Numbered from the whole stretch's first letter, positions 26,396 through 39,703 are shown. The stretch: DNA of 58,212 bases, filler included, from Sluysia triapertura (GCA_046118255.1; 4 parts of 4 records of this genome joined end to end with filler, not necessarily neighbours in it); one strand, 5' to 3'. Made by a program: numbers and translations. The notes: generated by a model from the letters alone, not told the origin.

Positions 26396-26452
<57 letters not shown>

Positions 26453-27132
26453 GGTAATTTAGGTCTAGGACCTGATATAAGTAATAAACTTCTAGCAATA
26501 ATGAGACGATTTTATTTATGCAAGCATTCGCTTTAATATAAATTCTTCAAATGGATCAATGACCTCTTTACAATGAAACACAGTAAGGACAAAAAACTAA
26601 TAAACTTTTGCGGGGATTCTAAACCTCAATTCATCCTATCAAATACAATAACGTCTTTTCAACATTCTCACAAAACTATTAATTCACATTCAATCTTTCA
26701 CTGTTTCATCTTCATCTTTACAGGTTTACATTCTCATACACTTCCACACTTTCAATAACCTTCTCTACATTAAAAACTTTAAAGTTCAATCAATTATTAT
26801 AGTTTAGTCTTTTTAATATTACAGATTTTTAATATTAATATTACATTCAGGTTTTAAATCTAAAAATTTGTTCTTGCATCTTTTATATTTCTGTGTCTAA
26901 TGAGTTTTGAGTTTCATTATGTGTATTTAAGGTTGTTTTCAGAATTTTGCTATCAGAAAGTGCGTTATGTGTAATATTGTTTAAGAAACGATGCTATAAC
27001 ACACCATACACTATTACAAACTGAATGAGATACATCATTTTAAAGTGAACTAGAAAATCGAATTCTTAGACAATATAAAAATACCTGTTGAGTTATTTTT
27101 GTAAATGATATTTTATATTTACATAATTACAG

Positions 27133-30100
27133 TTAAAGGAATGGAATTATTGTTGTGGAATCCATTGGTGGTAATAAAGAAATATTTCGATGACAATGAT
27201 GCTGATGTTGATATTAAAAATACTAATAATCGATATATTGAAGTTGATTTTCAAGATAAAGGTGCAAGTAAAAACTTAATTCTGCCGCATGAAGTGGTTG
27301 AATATCACATGGCCGATGCAAATTATGCCGCGTTGATGCTGATTTCTGTTAAGGTTATATATCAATATGTTAAACATTAACATTTTGTTTAAATGAGATG
27401 TGCGCATTATCACTAATTGTCACTTTTGTAAATAACGAAACTTATTAAAATTAATTTTATAATTTTTATTCTGAAAAAAGGTCATTAATTTGGGACTTTC
27501 TTGTCCTTGTAAAATTTTTATTTATAATTTTTGTGTTTTATAATATTTTATAGTTTTAAGATCTGTTCACTAAACGTATTTTTAAAAATTGGATTATTTG
27601 GTCTCCAGATCATTTAACTTGGTGCTTAATTTTAATATAGCCTTGTAAAATGAAAAAATGAATAATAAATTGGTGATCATATTAATCAAATTTACAACTT
27701 GTAGGACGAGAATAGTGATTATGGAGCTCGAATTGATGTTCGACCTCTGGGTAATTCAAAATGGTCCGAATGGACTCAGTACTTGCCAGAAAAAGAATAT
27801 CCGATCTGTTGTGCTTTGGTTAGTAATCGATATGCTACAACACTAAGTAGTAATGGTATTCTTCGGTGGTTTTCGTTACTGAGTGGTGATTTAGTGGATC
27901 AAGAAAGTATACCGGGATCTCCTGTAACTATTGCAGGTTTTGGTTCATTATGTAGTGCCTATAACGATTTTTCACTTAACAGTGACCGTATTAGTAATTT
28001 GGAAAAGGATAGTCTTTTAGTTGTCACTGATTGGGGTAGTTCTGCTTTGTACTGTCGTTGTGATAGAATTAAAACACCTGTTCCTGGACAGTTACGAAGC
28101 ACTGTTTTGTATGAAAGTTTTGTTAATTGGATTCCAGTGTCTATTTCTAAAGGATCTACTTTAATTTGGATCGGGTAAGTTAAGTTGAATTAGCAATTAA
28201 CACTTTGATTGAAGATGCTTTGAAATTAATGTAAAGTTATTATTTCACGACATTCTAAAAATTTAATATTTATTGATATAGAACATGACTTCAATGAATT
28301 ATTTTTTAGTATATGATTACTGCAAACATCTTCCACAGAGAAGGAAATGTGTATATTGTAAAACATGATACCTGGTATTGAAATATATCAATCCGAAAAT
28401 ATATGCTTTTTTCGTTGCATTTTACGACAAGCTCTTTCAAATATTTAAAACTGCACGTTTTACGTTTTTCACAAATATTGTCATTCATTTCATTCACAAA
28501 AAATGTGGATGATATAAAATCGTATTCACGGTTGGTTCTAGGTATCATTTATTGACACCTTTGATTTCTGGTTTCACAGGTACTTCGAGAAAGTAAAATT
28601 TAAACTCAATATAAAACGAAAGCGTATTTCTGTATCAGTATTAAAAGTACTTTAAAATAGAAAGAGGGACAGACTAAATTTATAAATTATTCACTAAACT
28701 AGATTTATTAATATTGCCATGATTTGTTATTAGTTTTTCTGATACTGGAGCCATTTTCTCGGTGGATTCAAAAAATCAGGTTCGCAAACTGTTAGAGGAT
28801 CGATGGAAACCGGTATTGGACTTGAAGAAGAGTTTACCATCTGCTCAACGTATTACTGATCGTTATTTTCCAATTGGTGTGATGGATAAATGGCGTGGTG
28901 AAAGCGATAGTATACCTTGCGGTGTTATGAGTGTGTTGTGTTGTGGTACGCGATCTCCTCGACTCACGCCTCTTCCACATCTTACTGTGGTGCCGTTTAA
29001 AATCCCAGTATGTCCTCAGATAAGTGAAATCAATGTAAGTTCTTTGTATCATTTTTTCAATTTGCTCTTTCAATTTTTAATCATTCCGATAATACGCATA
29101 ATTTACAGATAAAAAAACAACTGTCACTTCTCAAAATACCTAATTGTGGGTTTATGCTCAAGATGTACGATATTATTTAACATTGAATTTATCATTTTTC
29201 AAATTATAAAATGTTTATACAAAATGATAAATGTTTTATTATTTTAATATATTGTAATATATTTACATTTTAATTTAGCACAGTATTTTGTACAATCATC
29301 ATATTTACGATTGGTCAGATTCAAATAATTACGATGAGTTACTTTTAAAAGAACAAAAGATGCTTCTTACATTGTTTGCTGTTAGTACTTTTAATTTCTT
29401 ATATATTTATCTAGACTTTTCATTATTTTATATGAAATAGTAATCAATTTATAATTTAATTTTAAAGACAATTAAATGTACATTGTTTTAATTTTTTAAG
29501 CGATAAAATATTTGTAAATATTCCTTTTGTTTAGTAATCTTTGAATTTCAAAATATTTTATTAATCATTGTGATTTTTAATTGTGATAGAAACACAATAT
29601 TTATAGTCTTCCAAAATCTGTTTGCATAACCTATTTATAAACATTTTTGCAAACCTTTTCAAATATTGGCATAAACAAATATGAAGATTTAACTTATTGT
29701 CTATATTGTATACTGATGCTTAATAATAGTATGTCTGCATGATTTATGTCTATTTACTAATTAAGCTTTAATTCAACTATTTTATAAAAAATAATAAGAC
29801 AAGCTCTATTTTTATAAATAAAGATAACTAGTTTTAACATTTAATTTATAGTATCATAAATGTACTTTCTAGAAACTTGATCACAAAAGTCAGGATTATT
29901 TGTATACTTCATATTACTTAGTCTATAATAGTTTATTAATTTTTAACGAGTTATAATCTGAAGTATATTCAAATAGATTATTTCGTATTTATAAGGCAAT
30001 TGTTTACATATTTGTACTATAATCCTGCTATCACTATGACAATTACACAAACAAGATTAAATAATATATATTTCAAATGAGAAAGTTATAAGTAATTATG

Positions 30101-33100
30101 CAATTTTGGAATTGAATTAAGGGCTTGAGAATTTTGATAAAATATTGATATAATTTCGATTTCACCACTAATATTAAATTTATAGTAATGTAAAAAATTA
30201 AAAAGTTATTAGTTTATGTTTTATATAATATGTATGTGTTTGTAATGAACTTTTAATTTCTGCTAATAATCTAAATTTCTTTATTCTTATTCTTTAGTAA
30301 TAACTTAAACTTTAATATTCTCACTTTATATTACTGGAGATACAATCTTTTATAAATGTAAAATTATTTAATGTAAAAATTTTTACTTTTTCGTTACTTT
30401 GACAAAATTCAAAATTTATATGTTTTATACTTTTTAATTAACTTCTTAAACTTTAAGTTTTATTTTAATTAGTTAAACAATTGTCTGGAGGTACAAATTC
30501 GTCCTAGTTGTTCAGGATAGAAGTGCTAAATAATCGGTTATGTAATTAAATTCTCAATACTAACTTACTATTTTTTTCGTCAAATTCATAGCTTGTTGTC
30601 TTAATTCAAATATTGAGGAAATTACTTGATTCTTTTAAATCACTATCTTTCATGAATTTTAGATTTTATTGTACGAGCTCTATTGTCAAGCCCTTTTACT
30701 TTATGTTTTAAATAGAAAAAATATAAAGAAACTCAAATGCTAAATATTTATTCAATAAATTTCAACTTTAAATTACAAAGTTTTTAATTTTTTAATTCAA
30801 ATATCATATAATAAGTACAATAAATTTATATTAATCTTAACCGAAAATAACATCCACTCACTTTTTATAACTTGATAAATAATCGAATGTAATGATAAGA
30901 TTTTTTAAAATAGCTCTAATACTATCCCAATAGGGACGTTCTATAAAGACCTTTATCAGTGCACAATAATTTATATTTCGAATATAACCGTGTTTTGTTT
31001 TGGTTTTCTGTTTTAAGTTCTTAGTGTATTTATACTATTATCAATTAATCATAATTCAGTACATTATAATAACCCAAAATACTTCGATAAATTAATTACA
31101 ATCATAGAACAACCAATTTAAACAAATGATTTAATATTTTCGGTGCACAATAATTCTATAAAATCATAATACATATAATTTATTATTTTAACATAATTAT
31201 TGTAATAATATAAACTAATTTATCAATAACTTCTAATTCAAACTGAATATAATCAATAACTTCAAACTAAATAATAGTTGTATCATTTTCGGTCAAAATT
31301 TGATTTTATATTACTGATAATTAAATTTTAAATTCATATTACTGTTACTGATTTTTGTTTGATTATAATTCTTTCAAAAAAAATTAGGTATAATTCTATT
31401 AATGTTTATCAATTTTAATTTCATATTGTCTTTATTGAATCTTACTTGAAGATTGTTATTTAATTTGATTGTTAGTAAATTTTGAATTTATATTAACTAT
31501 ATTGTAATCTCATTTTAAATTGATACTAAAGCATTATACTCTTAGTAATTTTTTGAGCAATATTATTTTAATATTATACTTTATCATATCATTAAAAATT
31601 TTTAAAATGAACATTATTTATTTACAAAATGCTAAAGGTGAAATGAGTATGATATTTAAAATTCTTTTACAATTTACAAAACAAAATATTACAGTAAATT
31701 ATACGTTTTTGATCTTTAAAATTGTTTCATTAGGTCTTGGGTGAATAAACAATACCAAGTGTCTTTAATTTTTTGGCATAAAGTTAAGATATTAATCTGA
31801 TTATATTATTCGTATAGCTTTCTGCTAGTGTCTTATAATTAAAAAGATCCAGTTTCTAGTAATTTGGGGCCAATCTATTTTGATAATAAGGTAAATATGA
31901 CTATGTTATTACACATTTTATAGTTATTTAACAAAAACTTCATCTTACACCAATTTTCAGGCCATTTCGTCATTCTTGCAAGCAATTTTGTCAACTTAAA
32001 AATAAAATTAATTTATTATTTAAACTTTCAAAAATTATTTTAAAATGATGTTATTAGCTTTATATATATTAAAAAATTAATAATCAGTAATTGGTTCTCC
32101 CGCTAAACATCTAACGTATTGCTTCCATTGGAAAACATATTTTCAATTGGATTGAGAAAAAGCAGGAATATTGTGCAATTTATTCTCGCTTCAGAGACCG
32201 ATATTTCAAAATCATTCATGCACCTCTGTTTCAGTTTTATCAACGGAACTGAGCAATCCTGATGGATCCATTCTTTTATTTTAGCCTTTTGAGGGATTGT
32301 TAATTTTGGTGCACGGTCTTATCCAGGACGTTTGACCATTACTTAGCCAGTTTTATTGTATAGCGTAATAAAGCTACTAGCGGTGGTCCTTTTAATACCC
32401 ATGATAACTCCAAATAGGAATCTATTTGTCTATCTGGATTTGTAATTTTTGCATAAGGATTTCTGGTTTTGTTTAATTCAGACATACGATAAAGCTAATA
32501 ACATTTTAAAATTATTTTTTAAATTTTAAATTTATTTTAAATATTAAATTAATTTTATTTTTAAGTTGACGAAATTGCTTGCAAGAATTACGAAATGGCA
32601 TGAAAAATAGTGTAAAATAAAGCTAATACGACGCATTAATTTTAAAAAATGTATCAAAAGAAATTTTCTTAAATTAAGATTTAAACAAAAGAAACAAAAA
32701 CATAATATAATAAACATTGAGTGGAATTCACTACACTTAATTATCAAATCGCGGAAGCTATGGAACAGACGTTAGTACTGGAAGGACCAAAAAACATGAT
32801 TTTAAAATAGAAATGAATGAACAAATGTAAACTGAAAAAACTACATGGTTTCATATGAATACATAAAAATTATAGCTAAACTAATATGTAAATTTTTAAA
32901 TTAGGATGTGATTTAGGATGCCTTATCCTTAACCTAAGTTCTCTATGATACTGGACTTACTGAAGGGCCAGCACATAGGTTCGCAGATTTTAAGAAAGAA
33001 GAGATAAGAACTTGATGTTTATATTGATATTTAATTATGTTTCTTAGATCCAAATAATTATTGTTTTTCTTCAATTAAGATTTTACTATAATTTGGAAAA

Positions 33101-35498
33101 TAGCCAGTATTCAAAGAATTGTCAGTATTAATTCAAATATTATGCTACTTAGCAAGCTTATTTTATTCAAAATATTACCAATTATCAAAAACACAAATTC
33201 TAACATTATGAATTATTTATATAAAAAATACAAATACATAAAAGTTTAAACACTTATACAATTAATAAATAGCAAATTGTTAATTATCAAATAAACTTAG
33301 AAAGTGTCAAACATATACAAAATTCTATGCAAAAATTAAAAGTTCATTTATATAAATGTTGAATAGTATTAATTTAATATGTCAAATGTAGCGATTTAGA
33401 TTTGCTATTTATAGTGTTTCTAAATATTATTTTTTGTAATTCTATTAATAAAATAGTAACTTTAATAATTAATACAATTTTTTAAATTAATTATTATATT
33501 TTTACTATATTTAAATACTATTTTAATAATTTCTTAACAATTTAATATTTTTAAAATAATTTAATATTTTTTAATAAATACATTAATAATTTTAATATTT
33601 AAATTTAATACATTAATAATTTAAAATAATATTTAAAATATGAAAAATACAATAAAATACACACAATATACATAAAATTATAATAATATATAATACGTTA
33701 CAATAATATTGTAGAAGAAAATTAATTAATATATAGTTGAAAAAGGTTATTTATTACAATAAATAAATAAAAATCATTTATACGATATTAACTGGGAAAA
33801 AAATGACCATGTAATATAATTTACTGCAATGAGAAATTAATTGCAGAAAAATTATTATTGAATAGGATTGAAGAATTTTTTAGCTATAAAATAAATTTAA
33901 AATCGGGTAACTTAATAAGCATTATAAAATTAATTAATTAATTACAAGGAAAGATCAAACGAGACTTTGATTTATTTTCTAAAATTATATAATTAAACAA
34001 TTGGACTAATTTTATTTTTCGTGAATTATTAAATGTGCCAGGATTTTCTATTAGTATGAATTTATTATTTCAGAGCAAAATGATAAGTAAGGGGCCCGCC
34101 TATATTGAGTCATATCTTTATACTTCTGAGTCTTTAATCAAAATCTTAGAGTAACTCTACTACTACTTACTGATACAACACTGCTTAATCTGAGTTTTTT
34201 ATTTGGTACAGGTAATCTGATGCGCAATGTATGTGGACTTATTCGTGTTTACAATATTATAATCGTACGATAGGGCCAATGGTATATAGTAATAACGACA
34301 TATGAATGTCTGATAAAAAATTTGGGTAAATTCTTATTTAACTAGTTTACGTTGCTCAATTTTTAGTTTTCTCGTTAAAATTGTTTAAAGTTATGCTAAC
34401 ATTTTTCAATGAACTCTAATGAATAAACAATAATAGAAATAATAAATTATTATAATTTTATTCTAAATTTTGAAGGTAGCCTGAAATTTCCTGCATCTTA
34501 AACCTTGATGTAACTTAACAAGTATAAACATACAAAAATAAATCACAAAATTAAGTACATCTGAAACTATTTAGAACTATTTACTAATTCAAAAAGGAAT
34601 TAGTATTGCCAACAAAATTGGCCACAAATGGACTTGTGTCGTAATATTCAATCTTAAGGTATCTCTGAATCACTAACAATTTATATTACTAACAATCTTA
34701 ATTTAATGGGTGTTGTGCCCTGATTATTTTGTGATCTTTACTATTATTCTAATTATTAATTATCATAATTATATTTATTATAATTTATTATTAATACATA
34801 TTACTCTATTATCATTACCATTATTATAAGGTTAGTACCTGACAAATATATATTCAATTTATAGGTATTCCATTTTAGAATTTCTTCGGCAATGGATTCA
34901 CTATACAATGATTTCCCACATACATCTTCAAAAGTTTATAAAAGTAGTTTTAATAGATAGCTATATGCGAAGAATTATTTAACAATTTATAGTAATTCTT
35001 TTGATTTTGTTTATTGTGACTATATTGTTTACTTAAAATAGTCGACTGTATTATATTAAAATCATTGTGTTATGTATTATTGTTTATAATTATTATATTT
35101 TATTTTCGATCATTTATAGTTATAATAATCTAACTATATTCTTTGCAGATATATAAAAATTTATTTGCATTAATTGATATTGATTATATTACTTATATAA
35201 TTTTTTGTTAAGATGTGTCTAAATAAAAATGAAGATTCACGTGCTTTTGGTCTTGCAAAATTAATGCCAGATTCTCGTACTGTAAATATGGCGATTCAGT
35301 GTGCTGCTAAATGTCACAAACGAGTATTAGTTCAACGACTTGGTGAATTGGCATTAGAATTAGACAAACAAGAACTAATATATAGACAAGACAAATCTGT
35401 CGAAATGAAACAATTTAATTACAGTGACCCGATAGAAATTCTCAAAAAACAAATATTTGATGCATCACAAAGTACTGTTTTAATTTTTAATTTGTTTC

Positions 35499-35577
<79 letters not shown>

Positions 35578-35814
35578 GAGTCAGTTGATAATGAAGAGAC
35601 GCAAATTGATGATTATAAAGAAAATGAAATGAATCAAACTTCAGAAACTGCAGGTCTAGTTAATTTATTAAATAAATTAGATGATGATAATGATGAGACC
35701 GATTTAGATGAAGATAGATCAACTTTTCAGCAATCGCAAACTGCTCCAAATCAATATAAAATAAGTAAATCACCATTTATAGTTAGTTATTACTATTACT
35801 ATTATTATTATAAC

Positions 35815-35875
<61 letters not shown>

Positions 35876-36133
35876 CATAAATAGAAAGCTTTGTCGAATG
35901 ACACATCAGCTCCGGTTGAATTGGATAATATAATAAATGGTAATAAGTCCACATCTGATAAAAAGTCGAATAGTAAATTCAATTCGTCTACGATATTTGG
36001 TCAATTTAAACCAACTATTCCACCACATAAGAAAACATTCGTATTAAAAAAAAAGTCTGTTGCACGTAAAAAGAATGATAATGATGCCGATAAAGATGAA
36101 AGTAGTCCAGTCGCCAAAATGATGAAATTCTAG
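27133..36133 (+). CDS. WDHD1: WD repeat and HMG-box DNA-binding protein 1 (AND-1/Ctf4), 3' part: exons 27133-27353, 27705-28174, 28734-29034, 29279-29380, 35213-35471, 35579-35781, 35885-36133
   Basis: GT-AG exons join in frame into the SepB domain: LLWNPLVVIKKY..IEVDFQD..; EWTQYLPEKEYPICCAL..GSPVTIAG..; LIWIG|FSDTGAIFSVDS..WKPV..PFKIPVC; KEQKMLLTLFA|MCLNKNEDSRAFGLAKLM..AIQCA..LVQRLGELA. Colinear with AND-1/Ctf4 as remembered. Ends with TAG at 36131-36133. N-terminal WD40 exons are not on this scaffold. Confidence 0.9.
31948..32612 (-). mobile_element. Internally deleted IS630/Tc1-like (DD37E/TRT-like) transposon with long TIRs, inside the WDHD1 intron
   Basis: TA-flanked; ~110-bp imperfect TIRs (CACCAATTTTCAGGCCATTTCG... 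/ ...CGAAATGGCATGAAAAATAGTG). Minus-strand frames GIKRTTASSFITLYNKTG..KLTIPQKAKIKEWIHQD..ISVSEARI and FLNPIENMFS/WKQYVR (cf. YSPFLNPIE..FS.WK). Confidence 0.85.
32885..33700 (+). repeat. Long direct repeat, copy 1 (in WDHD1 intron)
   Basis: Highly similar to 37405-38627 (e.g. CTGAAGGGCCAGCACATAG...TTTTAAGAAAGAAGAGATAAGAAC... through ...ACGTTACA). Confidence 0.9.
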
Positions 36134-37404
36134 TTAAATTTAATTTATTAGACTTCTGGAATTTATTATTTTTTTACATTAATGTTTGATAAGTTACAAT
36201 AAAAATAATGTCAAATAAATTAATTTAAAAGTTAACTAAAGAAATTAAAAATAGAATGTAAGAAATATGTACTTGAAATTTGCGCACTAAGCCTCAAAAA
36301 GATCATAAGTTAATAAAAATACATAAATATATACAAACAACTGCAAGATTCTTTCATTCCAGGTTATTTGCGAGTTACATTACCAAACTAATATTACAGA
36401 GTAAATACTATAAAATATATGAAATTTCGTCATAATATTACGATCATATATATTATGTTACTAGAAAACACTATAGAGACAAAAATAAAATTTATACAAA
36501 ATCTAATTATAAAATTAGAAGAATTTAATATCGCATTTATTCAAATTGACGTTTTTAAATTTATCATTCACATTGAATTGATTTGAACTAACTATATTGA
36601 TTTTTTTATTTAAAATCAATAGAATTTTGTTTGGGTGAACGCGTTTAGTGAATTTAGATTTAAATATCATGAAACTGAAATTAAATTGTGTTTATTGTAA
36701 TATAATGTTCATTTATTTTTAAATTTATCAAAATTTTAAATCAAATCTAAAGTCCATTTAATTGGAATTCATTTCTTTAAATAAATTAGAATCATAGTAT
36801 TGCTTTTATATCAATTTAAAATGAAATTTAATAGAGTTAATATAAATTCGAAATTCAACAGCAAATAGAAACCCATTTTAAATTGAAATTAAACGAATGA
36901 TAGATTCTATAAAGAGAGTGCAAAATCATACTTTAAGAACATAAAGCACAATAAAAATCATTTTAATACGTAAGTTATAATTATGTTAAACTGAGATTGA
37001 ATAAAACTTGATTTAATTCAAAATTAGTAACATTATTCTCGATTAAAATTAACTTAAATTAAAGATTGGGCAGAACAGGGAAATAAATTATTCAGAAAAA
37101 AATTAGTATTACTATTTATTACTTGTATATATTTGCTAACTACTATTATTAATGTTTGAATAATAACTAGTTATATTACAAAAATTATATTCATACAAAA
37201 TAAAAATTCTAAAAATTAATTATTTAAAGCTTAACAAAAAACAGTATAAATACTGTTACCGAAAATAAAAAGCACCGAGTTAATAGAAGGCAAGGTTAAT
37301 TATAAGTGGAAGCTGAATGTGGTGCCCAAGTTATTCATAAATTCTCAATTACAAATATTTCATACACATTACAACCTCGCTACATTTTGCATGCACGATA
37401 TATA

Positions 37405-38627
37405 TAATGGAAATTTTAGATTCGGATGTCATTAAGATTTTGATTTTGGATTAAGTCTTATCATTAACGTTAGGTCTCTGTGATACTTGACTTACTCACT
37501 GAAGGGCCAGCACATAGATTCGAAGATTTTAAGAAAGAAGAGATAAGAACTGGATGTTTATATTGATATTTAATTCTCTTTCTTAGATCTATATAATTAT
37601 TATTTTTCTTCAATTAAGATTTGGAAAATAGTCAGTATTTAAAGAATTATCCGTATTAATTCAAATTAAGATTTTAAGATTTTACTACAATTTGGAAAAT
37701 AGGCAGTATTCAAAGAATTGTCAATATTAATTCAAATATTATGCTACTTAGCAAGCTTATTTTATTCAAAATATTACCAATTATCAAAACACAAATTCTA
37801 ATATTATGAATTATTTATTGAAAAACAACAAATACATAAAAGTTTAAACACTTATACAATTAATAAAAGGCAAATTGTTAATTATCAAATAAACTTAGAA
37901 AGTGTCAAACATATACAAAAATCTATGCAAAAATTAAAAGTTCATTTATATAAATGTTGAATAGTATTAATTTAATATGTCAAATGTCAAAAATTAAAAA
38001 TTTGTCTATATTATAGGGATAAATGTTGAACAAGATTAATATATAATTAATATGTTGTGATTGAATGTTAATAAATAATTTTTTACTGTATTAAATATGC
38101 TTTTAGTTTATAAATTAAATTTGAGTCTATTTTATATAATTACAAATTAACTTCACTTAAAAAAGCATAAAACTAACCATTAATATAAATTAATTTTTCC
38201 AAATATCAATAATTTTTTTAAACAAATAAGTTTCTTTTCTCCAGATATAAATGAATTGTCAATATCATTAAAAAATATATTTTTAAACTTTTAAAATTCA
38301 AATTATATTTATGATTTTGTAGCGATTTAGATTCGCGATTTATAGTGTTTCTAAATATTATTTTTAGTAGTTCTATTAATAAAATAGTAACTTTAATAAT
38401 TAAAACAAATTTTTAAATTAATTATTATATTTTTAATAATATATTTTTTAAATACTATTTTAATAACTTCTTAACAATTTAATGTTTTTAAAATAATTTA
38501 ATATTTTTAATAAATACATTAATAATTTTAATATTTAATACATTAATAATTTAAAATAATATTTAAAATATCAAAAATACTATAAAATACACACAATATG
38601 CATAATTAAAATATTATATACGTTACA
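37405..38627 (+). repeat. Long direct repeat, copy 2 (downstream of WDHD1), with ~330 bp extra internal sequence and a short internal duplication
   Basis: Colinear with 32885-33700; extra segment ~37988-38318 bounded by TGT microhomology. Confidence 0.9.
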
Positions 38628-39229
38628 TATCTAAAGACGTAACATTATTATTCGTTTGTGTAATTTGTGTTTTTAATCATTTGTGGTAATTTTATTTATT
38701 GGTATTCAGAAATATATTCAGAACATATATTTCTCCTTAAAATTTAACTAGAATCTTCTTTACTATTTTTAATTGACAAAAATTATCATACAATAATCCC
38801 CCTTGCTCTTTGAAATTAAAAATTTTATAACCCTTTTAAAGCTTATTAAAATTAAGAAGATAATTCAATATTAACGGTAACAATAGCTAAAAATGTTTTG
38901 TTCAGCAATTAAGATAAAATAAAATTAATTTCTTATATTAAATTGTGCTTAATGTAGAACAAAAATTTCAATTATGAATTTAGTAGTAGTCTTAAATTAC
39001 TATAAAAAAGAGATCAAAGTATTTTAAGGTGGATTTTATTCCTTGTCGTAATCAAGGCAACTTTATTAAATACAAACTTACGATAACAGAATTAAAAGTT
39101 TTGAGGGAAACTGGTTGTGTGCAATGTGTAACTAAAATAATTAATTCACCAAATTAAATAGCTTAAAAATATTGCAAGTGCTTTTTCTCTTAAAAGAACT
39201 TAACATACTTACAAAATATCTGATGAGTC

Positions 39230-39703
39230 GGCCCGCCTAATATACACTGTTTATACCACTATTGGAGATGTGCTATTAGGATTTTTATAACTTATACTTA
39301 ACTTAAAATATTTAAAAACTTTTTGCTTACATCTTACTGTGTATATGACAATAATTAATTGCTTATGTCTCTTCGATTAATTTATAATGCAACCCTTTAC
39401 GAGGTGTTGTTTAATTAAAATTACAAATTTTACTTGTACGCAACCCATAATAAGGTGTTGCTCTTCAAAATAAATATAGATTACAAAATCTGTATTAAGG
39501 TGCTGCTTTAAAGAAAAATCAATTTATTAAATTTACTAAATTCATTTAAAATAAAATTAACCCTCTTAAGATATATTACACTTAAAAATATACAACTTTT
39601 AACAAACAAATAATTATAATAATATTTTATACAACAACTCAACCTCGGTTGGTTGTTAATGTTTTTTGCGATTATATTTTGCAACTCTTTTTAAGGTGTT
39701 GCA
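39230..39703 (+). repeat. Repeat element with GGCCCGCCTA..CTATTAGGATTTT head and an array of GCAAC..GGTGTTGC imperfect palindromes
   Basis: Motifs at 39388, 39439, 39483 (degenerate), ~39634 (variant) and 39680; head shared with 40677-40730. Confidence 0.55.

What the first reader, a model, noticed from the sequence alone, without database searches (positions are those of the whole stretch)
35472..35884. WDHD1 exon clamped between complementary microsatellites: (AAT)26 runs straight into the acceptor AG and (TAT)n follows the donor
Seen: intron 35472-35578 is mostly (AAT)26 (35499-35576) ending directly in AG, with no polypyrimidine tract next to the acceptor. The next intron (35782-35884) is almost entirely (TAT)n. 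In the pre-mRNA the two runs are reverse complements and could form a ~60-75 bp AU duplex with the 203-nt exon in the loop. Established: flanking inverted repeats promote back-splicing or skipping, and simple-repeat pairing can substitute for a polypyrimidine tract. Inference: a microsatellite-driven circRNA/skipping switch on a replisome gene (skipping would frameshift), or U2AF-independent acceptor definition.
Basis: partly seen in the sequence, partly recalled or inferred. Interest (0 to 1): 0.7.

Follow-up and report, generated by a model that had tools for sequence, protein, structure and literature searches.

The report
Exon flanked by complementary AAT/ATT microsatellite introns
A real coding exon of a replication-fork gene (Ctf4/WDHD1) lies between two tiny introns made almost wholly of mirror-image AAT and ATT repeats that could pair in the RNA, but this is most likely two ordinary repeat expansions, and no RNA data exist to show any effect on splicing.

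Summary
(AAT)26 at 35499-35577 is perfect and runs straight into the acceptor AG at 35577-78. (TTA)29 at 35787-35873 starts five bases after the donor GTTAGT. The gene is a very divergent Ctf4/And-1/WDHD1 orthologue (Pfam Mcl1_mid and Ctf4_C). The 203-nt exon is real coding sequence: it is open in exactly the frame that links its neighbours (about 0.1% of shuffles or background windows). As naked RNA the two runs pair with probability about 0.9 (duplex about -70 kcal/mol), with the exon as the loop.

This geometry loops out an exon, as in skipping or back-splicing. It does not bridge an intron, which is the arrangement known to replace U2AF2, so that part of the reading fails. AAT/ATT arrays are common here (5 in 14.6 kb). 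They contain no GT or AG, and the AAU run supplies branch-site-like UAAUAAU motifs. Intron 2 keeps a near-consensus TATTAAC branch site.

My best reading is two near-neutral microsatellite expansions in short AT-rich introns that happen to lie in opposite orientation. By-product skipping or circRNA is possible. No RNA run of this organism and no close relative was available, so splicing behaviour is untested.

The parts
27133..27353 (+). Exon of the Ctf4/WDHD1 orthologue (start of the Mcl1_mid/SepB region). The gene's 5' part lies beyond the piece's edge.
   Evidence: Open frame with an AG acceptor and a GT donor. Weak Mcl1_mid match. Aligns by eye with P0002 residues around 405-470.
27705..28174 (+). 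Exon, Mcl1_mid beta-propeller.
   Evidence: Pfam PF12341, E = 4e-07. 36% identity to P0002 over all 157 aa.
28734..29034 (+). Exon, end of Mcl1_mid.
   Evidence: Pfam PF12341, E = 7.5e-11. Splice sites read.
29279..29380 (+). Exon, followed by a 5.8-kb repeat-laden intron (29381-35212).
   Evidence: Open frame, acceptor AG 29277-78, donor GTTAGT at 29381. Its ...LLTLFA end matches P0002 ...LLKLFA.
35213..35471 (+). Exon with the Ctf4 C-terminal helical domain. It ends in phase 1.
   Evidence: Pfam PF20946 Ctf4_C, E = 9e-09. 40% identity to P0002 818-882, E = 2e-14.
35472..35578 (+). Intron 1, 107 nt, GC 5.6%: GTACTG, a 21-nt T-rich stretch, (AAT)26, then AG.
   Evidence: It holds only one AG, its last two bases.
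35499..35577 (+). (AAT)26.3, perfect. It contains no GT or AG. It reads as 24 overlapping TAATAAT motifs, each matching 5 of 7 positions of the TACTAAC branch-site consensus.
35579..35781 (+). 203-nt exon (phase 1 to 0) encoding a 68-codon acidic, Asn/Asp-rich linker. GC 28%.
   Evidence: Open in the required frame in only 30 of 20000 shuffles and 12 of 10283 background windows. No Pfam or P0002 similarity.
35782..35884 (+). Intron 2, 103 nt, GC 7.8%: GTTAGT, (TTA)29, TATTAAC, 7 nt, then AG.
35787..35873 (+). (TTA/ATT)29, 90% pure, with a perfect (ATT)19 core at 35816-35872. It is the reverse complement of the AAT run.
35869..35875 (+). TATTAAC, a branch-site-like motif (6 of 7 positions of TACTAAC), ending 9 nt before the acceptor AG of intron 2.
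   Evidence: That it acts as a branch site is inference.
35885..36133 (+). Last exon: 82 codons plus the TAG stop (36131-36133), with a basic C-terminal patch. A second AG at 35887-88 gives an alternative start at 35889.
   Evidence: 0 of 10240 background windows of 246 nt are open. No Pfam HMG box.

Best explanation
These are two separate, nearly neutral AAT/ATT microsatellite expansions. They have taken over the spacer part of two short (about 105 nt), extremely AT-rich introns that flank a genuine coding exon near the 3' end of a very divergent Ctf4/And-1/WDHD1 gene.

The expansions are tolerated for three reasons:
1. Neither (AAT)n nor (ATT)n can create a GT or an AG. The donor therefore still sees the same first AG.
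2. The intron ends are intact: GTACTG...AG for intron 1, and GTTAGT...TATTAAC-N7-AG for intron 2.
3. In intron 1 the AAU run is a tandem array of branch-site-like UAAUAAU motifs close to the AG. This genome's acceptors carry only weak pyrimidine tracts anyway.

The two runs are complementary simply because they lie in opposite orientation, a 1-in-2 outcome. The predicted AU duplex is a real physical property of the pre-mRNA. It may cause some by-product exon skipping or a 203-nt circle. It is not a selected switch, and normal linear splicing gives the functional protein.

Shown: the repeats, the splice-site dinucleotides, the coding frame, the pairing potential and the gene identity. Inferred: which branch sites are used, constitutive splicing and neutrality.
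For: - AAT/ATT arrays are the commonest repeat of the locus: 5 arrays in 14.6 kb, in intron and in flanks.
- Both runs lack GT and AG. Intron 1 has a single AG, at its end.
- The only strict yTnAy motifs of intron 1 start 8 and 15 nt downstream of the donor GT. That is too close for a lariat by general knowledge of spliceosomal introns, so the branch must lie in the AAU run, which offers 24 TAATAAT motifs.
- Intron 2 keeps TATTAAC, ending 9 nt before its AG.
- Other acceptors of the gene have a pyrimidine fraction of only 0.50-0.62.
- Exon and last exon are open in mutually compatible frames, far beyond chance: 0.15% of shuffles, 0.12% of background windows, and 0 of 10240 windows for the last exon. 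The included form must therefore be made and selected.
- Liang & Wilusz found that hairpin stability does not predict circularisation, that low-complexity repeats can inhibit it, and that exons of 400 nt or less circularise poorly (PMC4201285).
Against: - At equilibrium the duplex is predicted to form with probability 0.91-0.93, even within 1.4 kb of context. Neither run has any competing self-structure.
- The stem closes exactly at the exon's two splice sites. Its outer end puts the upstream donor (27 nt away) next to the downstream acceptor (11 nt away). That is the geometry shown to promote back-splicing and skipping (PMC8330042, PMC4201285).
- If the duplex forms before intron 1 is spliced, it buries the only possible branch region of intron 1.
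- Both repeats are long and the first is perfect. Both nearly fill their introns, which is a striking coincidence.
- No RNA data were available to show constitutive splicing.
Confidence: 0.6

Rival explanations
1. Exon-looping duplex with real consequences. In vivo the (AAU)26 and (AUU)29 runs pair co-transcriptionally and loop out the 203-nt exon. A sizeable share of transcripts then skip the exon, or the exon is back-spliced into a 203-nt circle. Because microsatellite length is mutable, the ratio could vary between individuals. It might be used to tune the level or the C-terminal tail of the replisome adaptor.
For: - Pairing probability is 0.91-0.93, the duplex is about -70 kcal/mol, and neither run has self-structure.
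- The arms are 60 nt perfect and 79 nt at 95%. This is well above the 30-40 nt that suffice with miniature introns under 100 nt (PMC4201285), and above the 13 nt that suffice in C. elegans zip-2 (PMC8330042).
- The stem abuts both splice sites of the exon and brings the outer donor and acceptor together.
- A skip to the AG at 35887-88 stays in frame and would give a protein lacking only the acidic linker.
Against: - No RNA evidence exists.
- The included reading frame is clearly maintained.
- Exons of 400 nt or less circularised poorly, and low-complexity repeats or over-stable hairpins can inhibit circularisation, in the only systematic test (PMC4201285).
- AU-only helices slip between registers, so the centroid structure lacks the stem.
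- Such helices are easy prey for helicases and A/U-binding proteins (inference).
- AAT/ATT arrays are frequent here, so chance inverted pairs are expected.
- Conservation could not be tested, because no close relative exists in the protein libraries.
Confidence: 0.22
2. The gene model is wrong at this point. Either the coding region ends at the TAA at 35501 with intron 1 unspliced. Or 35472-35884/35888 is one 413-417-nt intron, bridged by complementary repeats at its two ends as in fish (AC)m-(GT)n introns, and the '203-nt exon' is not an exon at all.
For: - Neither tail exon has any detectable homologue or Pfam domain.
- The one relative found, P0002, has only about 50 residues after the Ctf4_C domain.
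- For the composite interval, the repeats do sit at opposite boundaries, as in the bridged introns of PMC4691745.
- A splice from 35471 to 35889 is in frame.
Against: - The 203-nt segment is open in exactly the linking frame: P is about 0.0015 by shuffling and 0.0012 in background windows.
- It has exon-like GC of 28%, against 5.6-7.8% in the flanking introns and 21.5% in the large intron.
- It is bounded by canonical AG and GTTAGT.
- The last exon's 82-codon frame is unmatched in 10240 background windows.
Confidence: 0.08
3. U2AF-independent acceptor definition: the repeat pairing replaces the missing polypyrimidine tract of intron 1.
For: The acceptor lacks a pyrimidine tract (pyrimidine fraction 0.35). 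Structure-bridged introns that do without U2AF2 exist in fish (PMC4691745).
Against: - In the known mechanism the complementary repeats lie at the two ends of the same intron. They are specifically not enriched across exons (PMC4691745).
- Here the partner lies in the next intron. Pairing therefore does not bring the donor and acceptor of intron 1 together, and it would occlude the intron's branch region.
- The AAU run already offers branch-like motifs next to the AG, which is a simpler explanation.
Confidence: 0.03

Closest known systems
Exons flanked by reverse-complementary matches (RCMs) in their introns, which promote back-splicing and exon skipping. Examples: Alu pairs in human ZKSCAN1/HIPK3, and 13-nt RCMs in C. 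elegans zip-2 (PMC4201285, PMC8330042).
   Same: The complementary tracts lie in the two introns directly flanking one exon. They are long enough (60-79 nt), they sit right next to the splice sites, and the introns are miniature (about 105 nt), like the minimal constructs that work.
   Different: The arms are pure A/U trinucleotide microsatellites, not transposon copies or unique sequence, so they pair in many registers. The exon is only 203 nt, a size that circularised poorly in the tested system. No circular or skipped RNA has been observed here.
(AC)m-(GT)n structure-bridged, U2AF2-independent introns of teleost fish (Lin et al. 2016, PMC4691745).
   Same: Complementary simple-sequence repeats lie next to splice sites. 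One acceptor has no polypyrimidine tract.
   Different: In fish the pair lies within one intron and is depleted across exons, whereas here it spans an exon. The repeat unit here is a trinucleotide and A/U-only. Only the hypothetical composite interval 35472-35884 would have the fish geometry.
Ctf4 / And-1 / WDHD1 replisome adaptor (host gene).
   Same: It has the Mcl1_mid (SepB) propeller and the Ctf4_C helical domain, in the canonical order.
   Different: It is extremely divergent: only one true relative, at 36-40% identity, appears among 1.84 billion representatives. No HMG box is present in the C-terminal exons. The N-terminal WD40 part lies outside the piece.

Membership tests
Ctf4/And-1/WDHD1 | Mcl1_mid (SepB) beta-propeller | tested here: met
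   PF12341 in 27705-28175 (E = 4e-07) and 28723-29010 (E = 7.5e-11). The second is above the gathering score.
Ctf4/And-1/WDHD1 | Ctf4 C-terminal helical domain after the propeller | tested here: met
   PF20946 in 35213-35470, 35.9 bits against a cut-off of 26.4. 40% identity to the same domain of P0002.
Ctf4/And-1/WDHD1 | N-terminal WD40 domain | not testable with these tools
   It would lie upstream of 26396, outside the piece.
Ctf4/And-1/WDHD1 | C-terminal HMG box (metazoan WDHD1 only) | tested here: not met
   No HMG match in 35581-35781 or 35885-36130 at E up to 1. The relative P0002 also lacks it.
RCM-flanked circularised or skipped exon | Reverse-complementary tracts of about 30-40 nt or more in both flanking introns | tested here: met
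   Arms of 60 nt at 100% and 79 nt at 95%. Pairing probability 0.91-0.93.
RCM-flanked circularised or skipped exon | Observed back-splice or skip junctions in RNA | not testable with these tools
   The only run holding the locus behaves as genomic DNA, and no RNA run holds it.
RCM-flanked circularised or skipped exon | Exon long enough to circularise efficiently | tested here: inconclusive
   The exon is 203 nt. Exons of 400 nt or less circularised poorly in the human ZKSCAN1 vector (PMC4201285). The rule for this organism is unknown.
Structure-bridged U2AF2-independent introns (Lin et al. 2016) | Complementary simple repeats at opposite boundaries of the same intron | tested here: not met
   The two runs lie in different introns, across an exon. 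The paper reports co-occurrence across introns, not exons.
Structure-bridged U2AF2-independent introns (Lin et al. 2016) | Splicing independent of U2AF2 | not testable with these tools
   Needs in vitro or knock-down assays.

The most novel reading that the evidence does not exclude
A length-mutable pair of complementary A/U microsatellites acts as a heritable, tunable 'rheostat' of exon inclusion on a replisome gene. The longer and purer the two runs, the more the 203-nt exon is looped out. The looped exon is either skipped or released as a 203-nt circRNA. A skip to the AG at 35887-88 stays in frame and gives a protein without the acidic linker, while a skip to 35883-84 truncates the protein. 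If inverted AAT/ATT pairs were enriched across exons genome-wide, this would be a microsatellite-based splicing code in an extremely AT-rich genome, the exon-looping mirror image of the fish AC/GT intron-bridging system.
Probability: 0.08. Interest if true: 0.65.

Novelty: new member of a known kind. Interest (0 to 1): 0.3.

Why it matters
If the duplex does act in vivo, this would be a compact natural case for testing how far pure A/U simple-repeat pairing can redirect splicing. The introns are about 105 nt and the exon 203 nt. It would also test whether microsatellite length variation changes isoform ratios of an important replication gene. As it stands, the locus mainly shows how AT-rich short introns can be almost entirely replaced by AAT/ATT arrays without losing their splice signals. 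Those arrays contain no GT or AG, and in the AAU orientation they mimic branch sites. That is useful for gene prediction in such genomes: acceptors directly behind (AAT)n should not be rejected for lack of a pyrimidine tract.

Tried and rejected
1. RNA evidence. The look-up of sequencing runs returned one true holder, X11 (share 0.70, covering intron and flanks alike, so genomic DNA). It also returned ten runs with 5-6% of the words. Three of those were laid and none gave a contig on the stretch, so their share is probably the microsatellite words. X11's contigs stop at 35490 and resume at 35884, at the two repeats. The exon between them had no contig laid, which the tool itself says proves nothing.

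2. Comparative evidence.
- The search for homologous proteins with the 35201-35500 frame found nothing.
- The exhaustive HMMER search with the 157-aa exon found one true relative, P0002.
- Its DNA is not on record, its cluster has one unnamed member, and its next relative is fish WDHD1 at 24% identity.
- Conservation of the repeat arrangement therefore could not be tested, and the organism remains unidentified.

4. A transposon-type origin of the inverted arms was rejected. Complementarity beyond the microsatellites falls to about chance level for AT-rich sequence. It is 86% over 100 nt against 95-100% inside the runs.

5. Read-through of the repeats as coding was rejected for the standard code. 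The AAT run reads TAA in the upstream exon's frame. The ATT run reads poly-Tyr and then TAA.

6. Rfam found only a sub-threshold tmRNA-like match (16 bits against 47), taken as chance.

7. Pfam found nothing in the repeat-element ORFs.

8. A competing pairing partner upstream, the degenerate TTA array at 34738-34827, was rejected. Its duplex is only -24.9 kcal/mol and its pairing probability is 0.00.

9. The joined, spliced protein was not built or searched. Exons were searched one by one by reference. Only short junction neighbourhoods were translated in a script to check frames.

Full report
**What is there**

The piece (26396-40984) is 15-32% GC in 500-nt windows, mostly about 23%. On its + strand it carries the 3' two-thirds of a Ctf4/And-1/WDHD1 gene.
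- Pfam finds Mcl1_mid in the frames 27705-28175 and 28723-29010, and Ctf4_C in 35213-35470.
- Reading the splice sites directly gives these exons: 27133-27353, 27705-28174, 28734-29034, 29279-29380, 35213-35471, 35579-35781 and 35885-36133 (stop TAG).
- A 5.8-kb repeat-laden intron (29381-35212) separates the fourth and fifth exons.
- The N-terminal WD40 part lies beyond the piece's edge.
- The joined protein was not assembled or searched. Exons were handled one at a time by reference.

**The observation**

- (AAT)26.3 at 35499-35577 is perfect. (TTA)29 at 35787-35873 is 90% pure, with a perfect (ATT)19 core.
- Intron 1 (35472-35578, 107 nt) is GTACTG, then 21 T-rich bases, then the AAT run, whose next A is the A of the only AG in the intron.
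- Intron 2 (35782-35884, 103 nt) is GTTAGT, then the TTA run, then TATTAAC, then 7 nt, then AG.
- The 40 nt before the first acceptor are 35% pyrimidine. The five acceptors checked correctly in this gene have 50-62%.
- The arms are 60 nt at 100% and 79 nt at 95% complementary.

**Is the exon real?**

Yes, as far as sequence can show.
- The 203-nt segment is open in precisely the frame that carries phase 1 of the upstream exon into phase 0 of the downstream one.
- Only 30 of 20000 shuffles of the exon, and 12 of 10283 non-coding windows of the same piece, do that.
- The last exon's 82-codon frame is matched by 0 of 10240 background windows.
- GC is 28-32% in the three exons, against 5.6% and 7.8% in the two introns.
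- Neither tail exon has a homologue or a Pfam domain. This support is therefore statistical, not comparative.
- Retaining intron 1 stops translation at 35501. Retaining intron 2 gives poly-Tyr and then a stop.

**Pairing**

- The 413-nt interval folds as RNA to -100.8 kcal/mol (shuffles -55.7 ± 4.7, z = -9.5). A continuous AU stem of about 57 bp forms, and the exon is the loop.
- The centroid structure lacks the stem only because it can form in many registers.
- Summed over registers, each base of the AAT run pairs with the TTA run with mean probability 0.93. The value is still 0.91-0.92 within 0.9 and 1.4 kb of context.
- The bimolecular duplex energy is -70 kcal/mol, and each run alone has no structure at all.
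- The degenerate TTA array 670 nt upstream is no competitor: -24.9 kcal/mol, probability 0.00.
- The same holds for single-stranded DNA (-65 kcal/mol, z = -10.7).
- The stem's inner end abuts the exon's acceptor and donor. Its outer end leaves the upstream donor 27 nt away and the downstream acceptor 11 nt away.

**What the literature says about that geometry**

- Reverse-complementary matches in flanking introns promote both back-splicing and skipping of the enclosed exon (C. elegans zip-2, PMC8330042).
- Miniature introns under 100 nt with inverted repeats of 30-40 nt suffice for circularisation (PMC4201285).
- The same paper shows that hairpin stability does not predict efficiency, that low-complexity tracts can inhibit, and that exons of 400 nt or less circularised poorly.
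There the complementary AC and GT runs sit at the two ends of one intron and are explicitly not enriched across exons. The present pair spans an exon, so that family's defining feature is not met.

**How intron 1 can do without a pyrimidine tract**

- The only strict yTnAy motifs in intron 1 start 8 and 15 nt downstream of the donor GT. From general knowledge of spliceosomal introns, that is too close for lariat formation.
- The branch must therefore lie in the AAU run. The run is 24 overlapping UAAUAAU motifs, each matching 5 of 7 positions of UACUAAC.
- Neither repeat can generate GT or AG. Expansion therefore creates no cryptic site, and the first AG after any branch remains 35577-78.
- AGs at 35579-80 and 35583-84 follow. 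The last of these is also in frame, so the acceptor may be off by 6 nt.
- These are inferences from sequence, not observations of RNA.

**Chance**

- AAT/ATT-type arrays occur five times in 14.6 kb: 26396-26452, 34738-34827, 35499-35577, 35787-35873 and 40370-40462.
- At that density, roughly one array in ten would have an oppositely oriented neighbour within 300 nt.
- This is a rough figure from a very small sample.

**Missing evidence**

- No RNA run holds the locus.
- The one holder (X11) covers intron and flanks at even depth with 0 mismatches. Its contigs break at both repeats.
- No close relative exists in the protein libraries. The exhaustive search found a single true relative, P0002 (924 aa, WD40 + Mcl1_mid + Ctf4_C, no HMG box, 36-40% identity). 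Its DNA is not on record.
- Conservation of the arrangement and the identity of the organism remain unknown.

**Verdict**

- The sequence feature is real and neatly described.
- The most probable account (about 0.6) is two near-neutral microsatellite expansions in short AT-rich introns that happen to lie in opposite orientation, with normal linear splicing producing the protein.
- A real exon-looping effect, meaning appreciable skipping or a 203-nt circle, keeps about 0.2.
- A wrong gene model keeps about 0.08.
- The U2AF-substitute idea keeps about 0.03.
- Interest is modest (0.3). It would rise sharply with a single RT-PCR showing skipped or circular products.

Noticed in passing
window 32955-33690 and 37494-38620: A dispersed repeat of about 0.7 kb or more is present twice in direct orientation at 87-97% identity. 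One copy lies inside the 5.8-kb intron of the gene and one lies downstream of it. Each copy carries AT-rich tandem arrays of 8-49 nt period (33489-33706 and 38409-38589). The second copy is about 330 nt longer in its middle. Its ORF fragments have no Pfam match.
   Followed up: partly
window 31938-32024 and 32536-32622: 87-nt inverted repeats, 91% complementary and 511 nt apart, lie inside the large intron. This looks like a small foldback or MITE-type element. The ORF fragments just upstream of its right arm (32106-32494, minus strand) gave no Pfam hit.
   Followed up: partly
window 26396-26452, 34738-34827, 40370-40462: Three more TTA/ATT arrays are present: (TTA)19, perfect and cut by the piece's edge, and two degenerate ones. 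All are in the T-rich orientation on the + strand. The AAT run at 35499 is the only A-rich one of five. The sample is too small to call an orientation bias.
   Followed up: no
window 35577-35584 and 35883-35888: Both acceptors have tandem AGs. The first has AG at 35578, 35580 and 35584, of which 35578 and 35584 are both in frame and 6 nt apart. The second has AG at 35884 and 35888. A skip of the 203-nt exon to 35889 keeps the reading frame, whereas a skip to 35885 stops after 5 codons.
   Followed up: partly
window 27133-36133 (whole gene) and protein P0002: The Ctf4/WDHD1 orthologue is unusually divergent. An exhaustive HMMER search of 1.84 billion representatives with its 157-aa propeller exon gave only 5 hits at E up to 0.001, and only one of them is a true orthologue (36% identity). 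Neither protein has an HMG box. P0002 reads ...LFAVSCKCLLPIIF... where this gene has the donor GTTAGT (which would read Val-Ser) right after ...LFA. P0002 may therefore contain an unspliced short intron at the same position.
   Followed up: partly
window 35512-35868 in run X11: The one public run that holds this locus has contigs ending at 35490 and restarting at 35884. No contig was laid on the 203-nt exon between the two repeats. The tool warns that its filters can cause this, and contigs ending in AAT repeats may be removed as human-like. It is therefore not evidence of absence.
   Followed up: no
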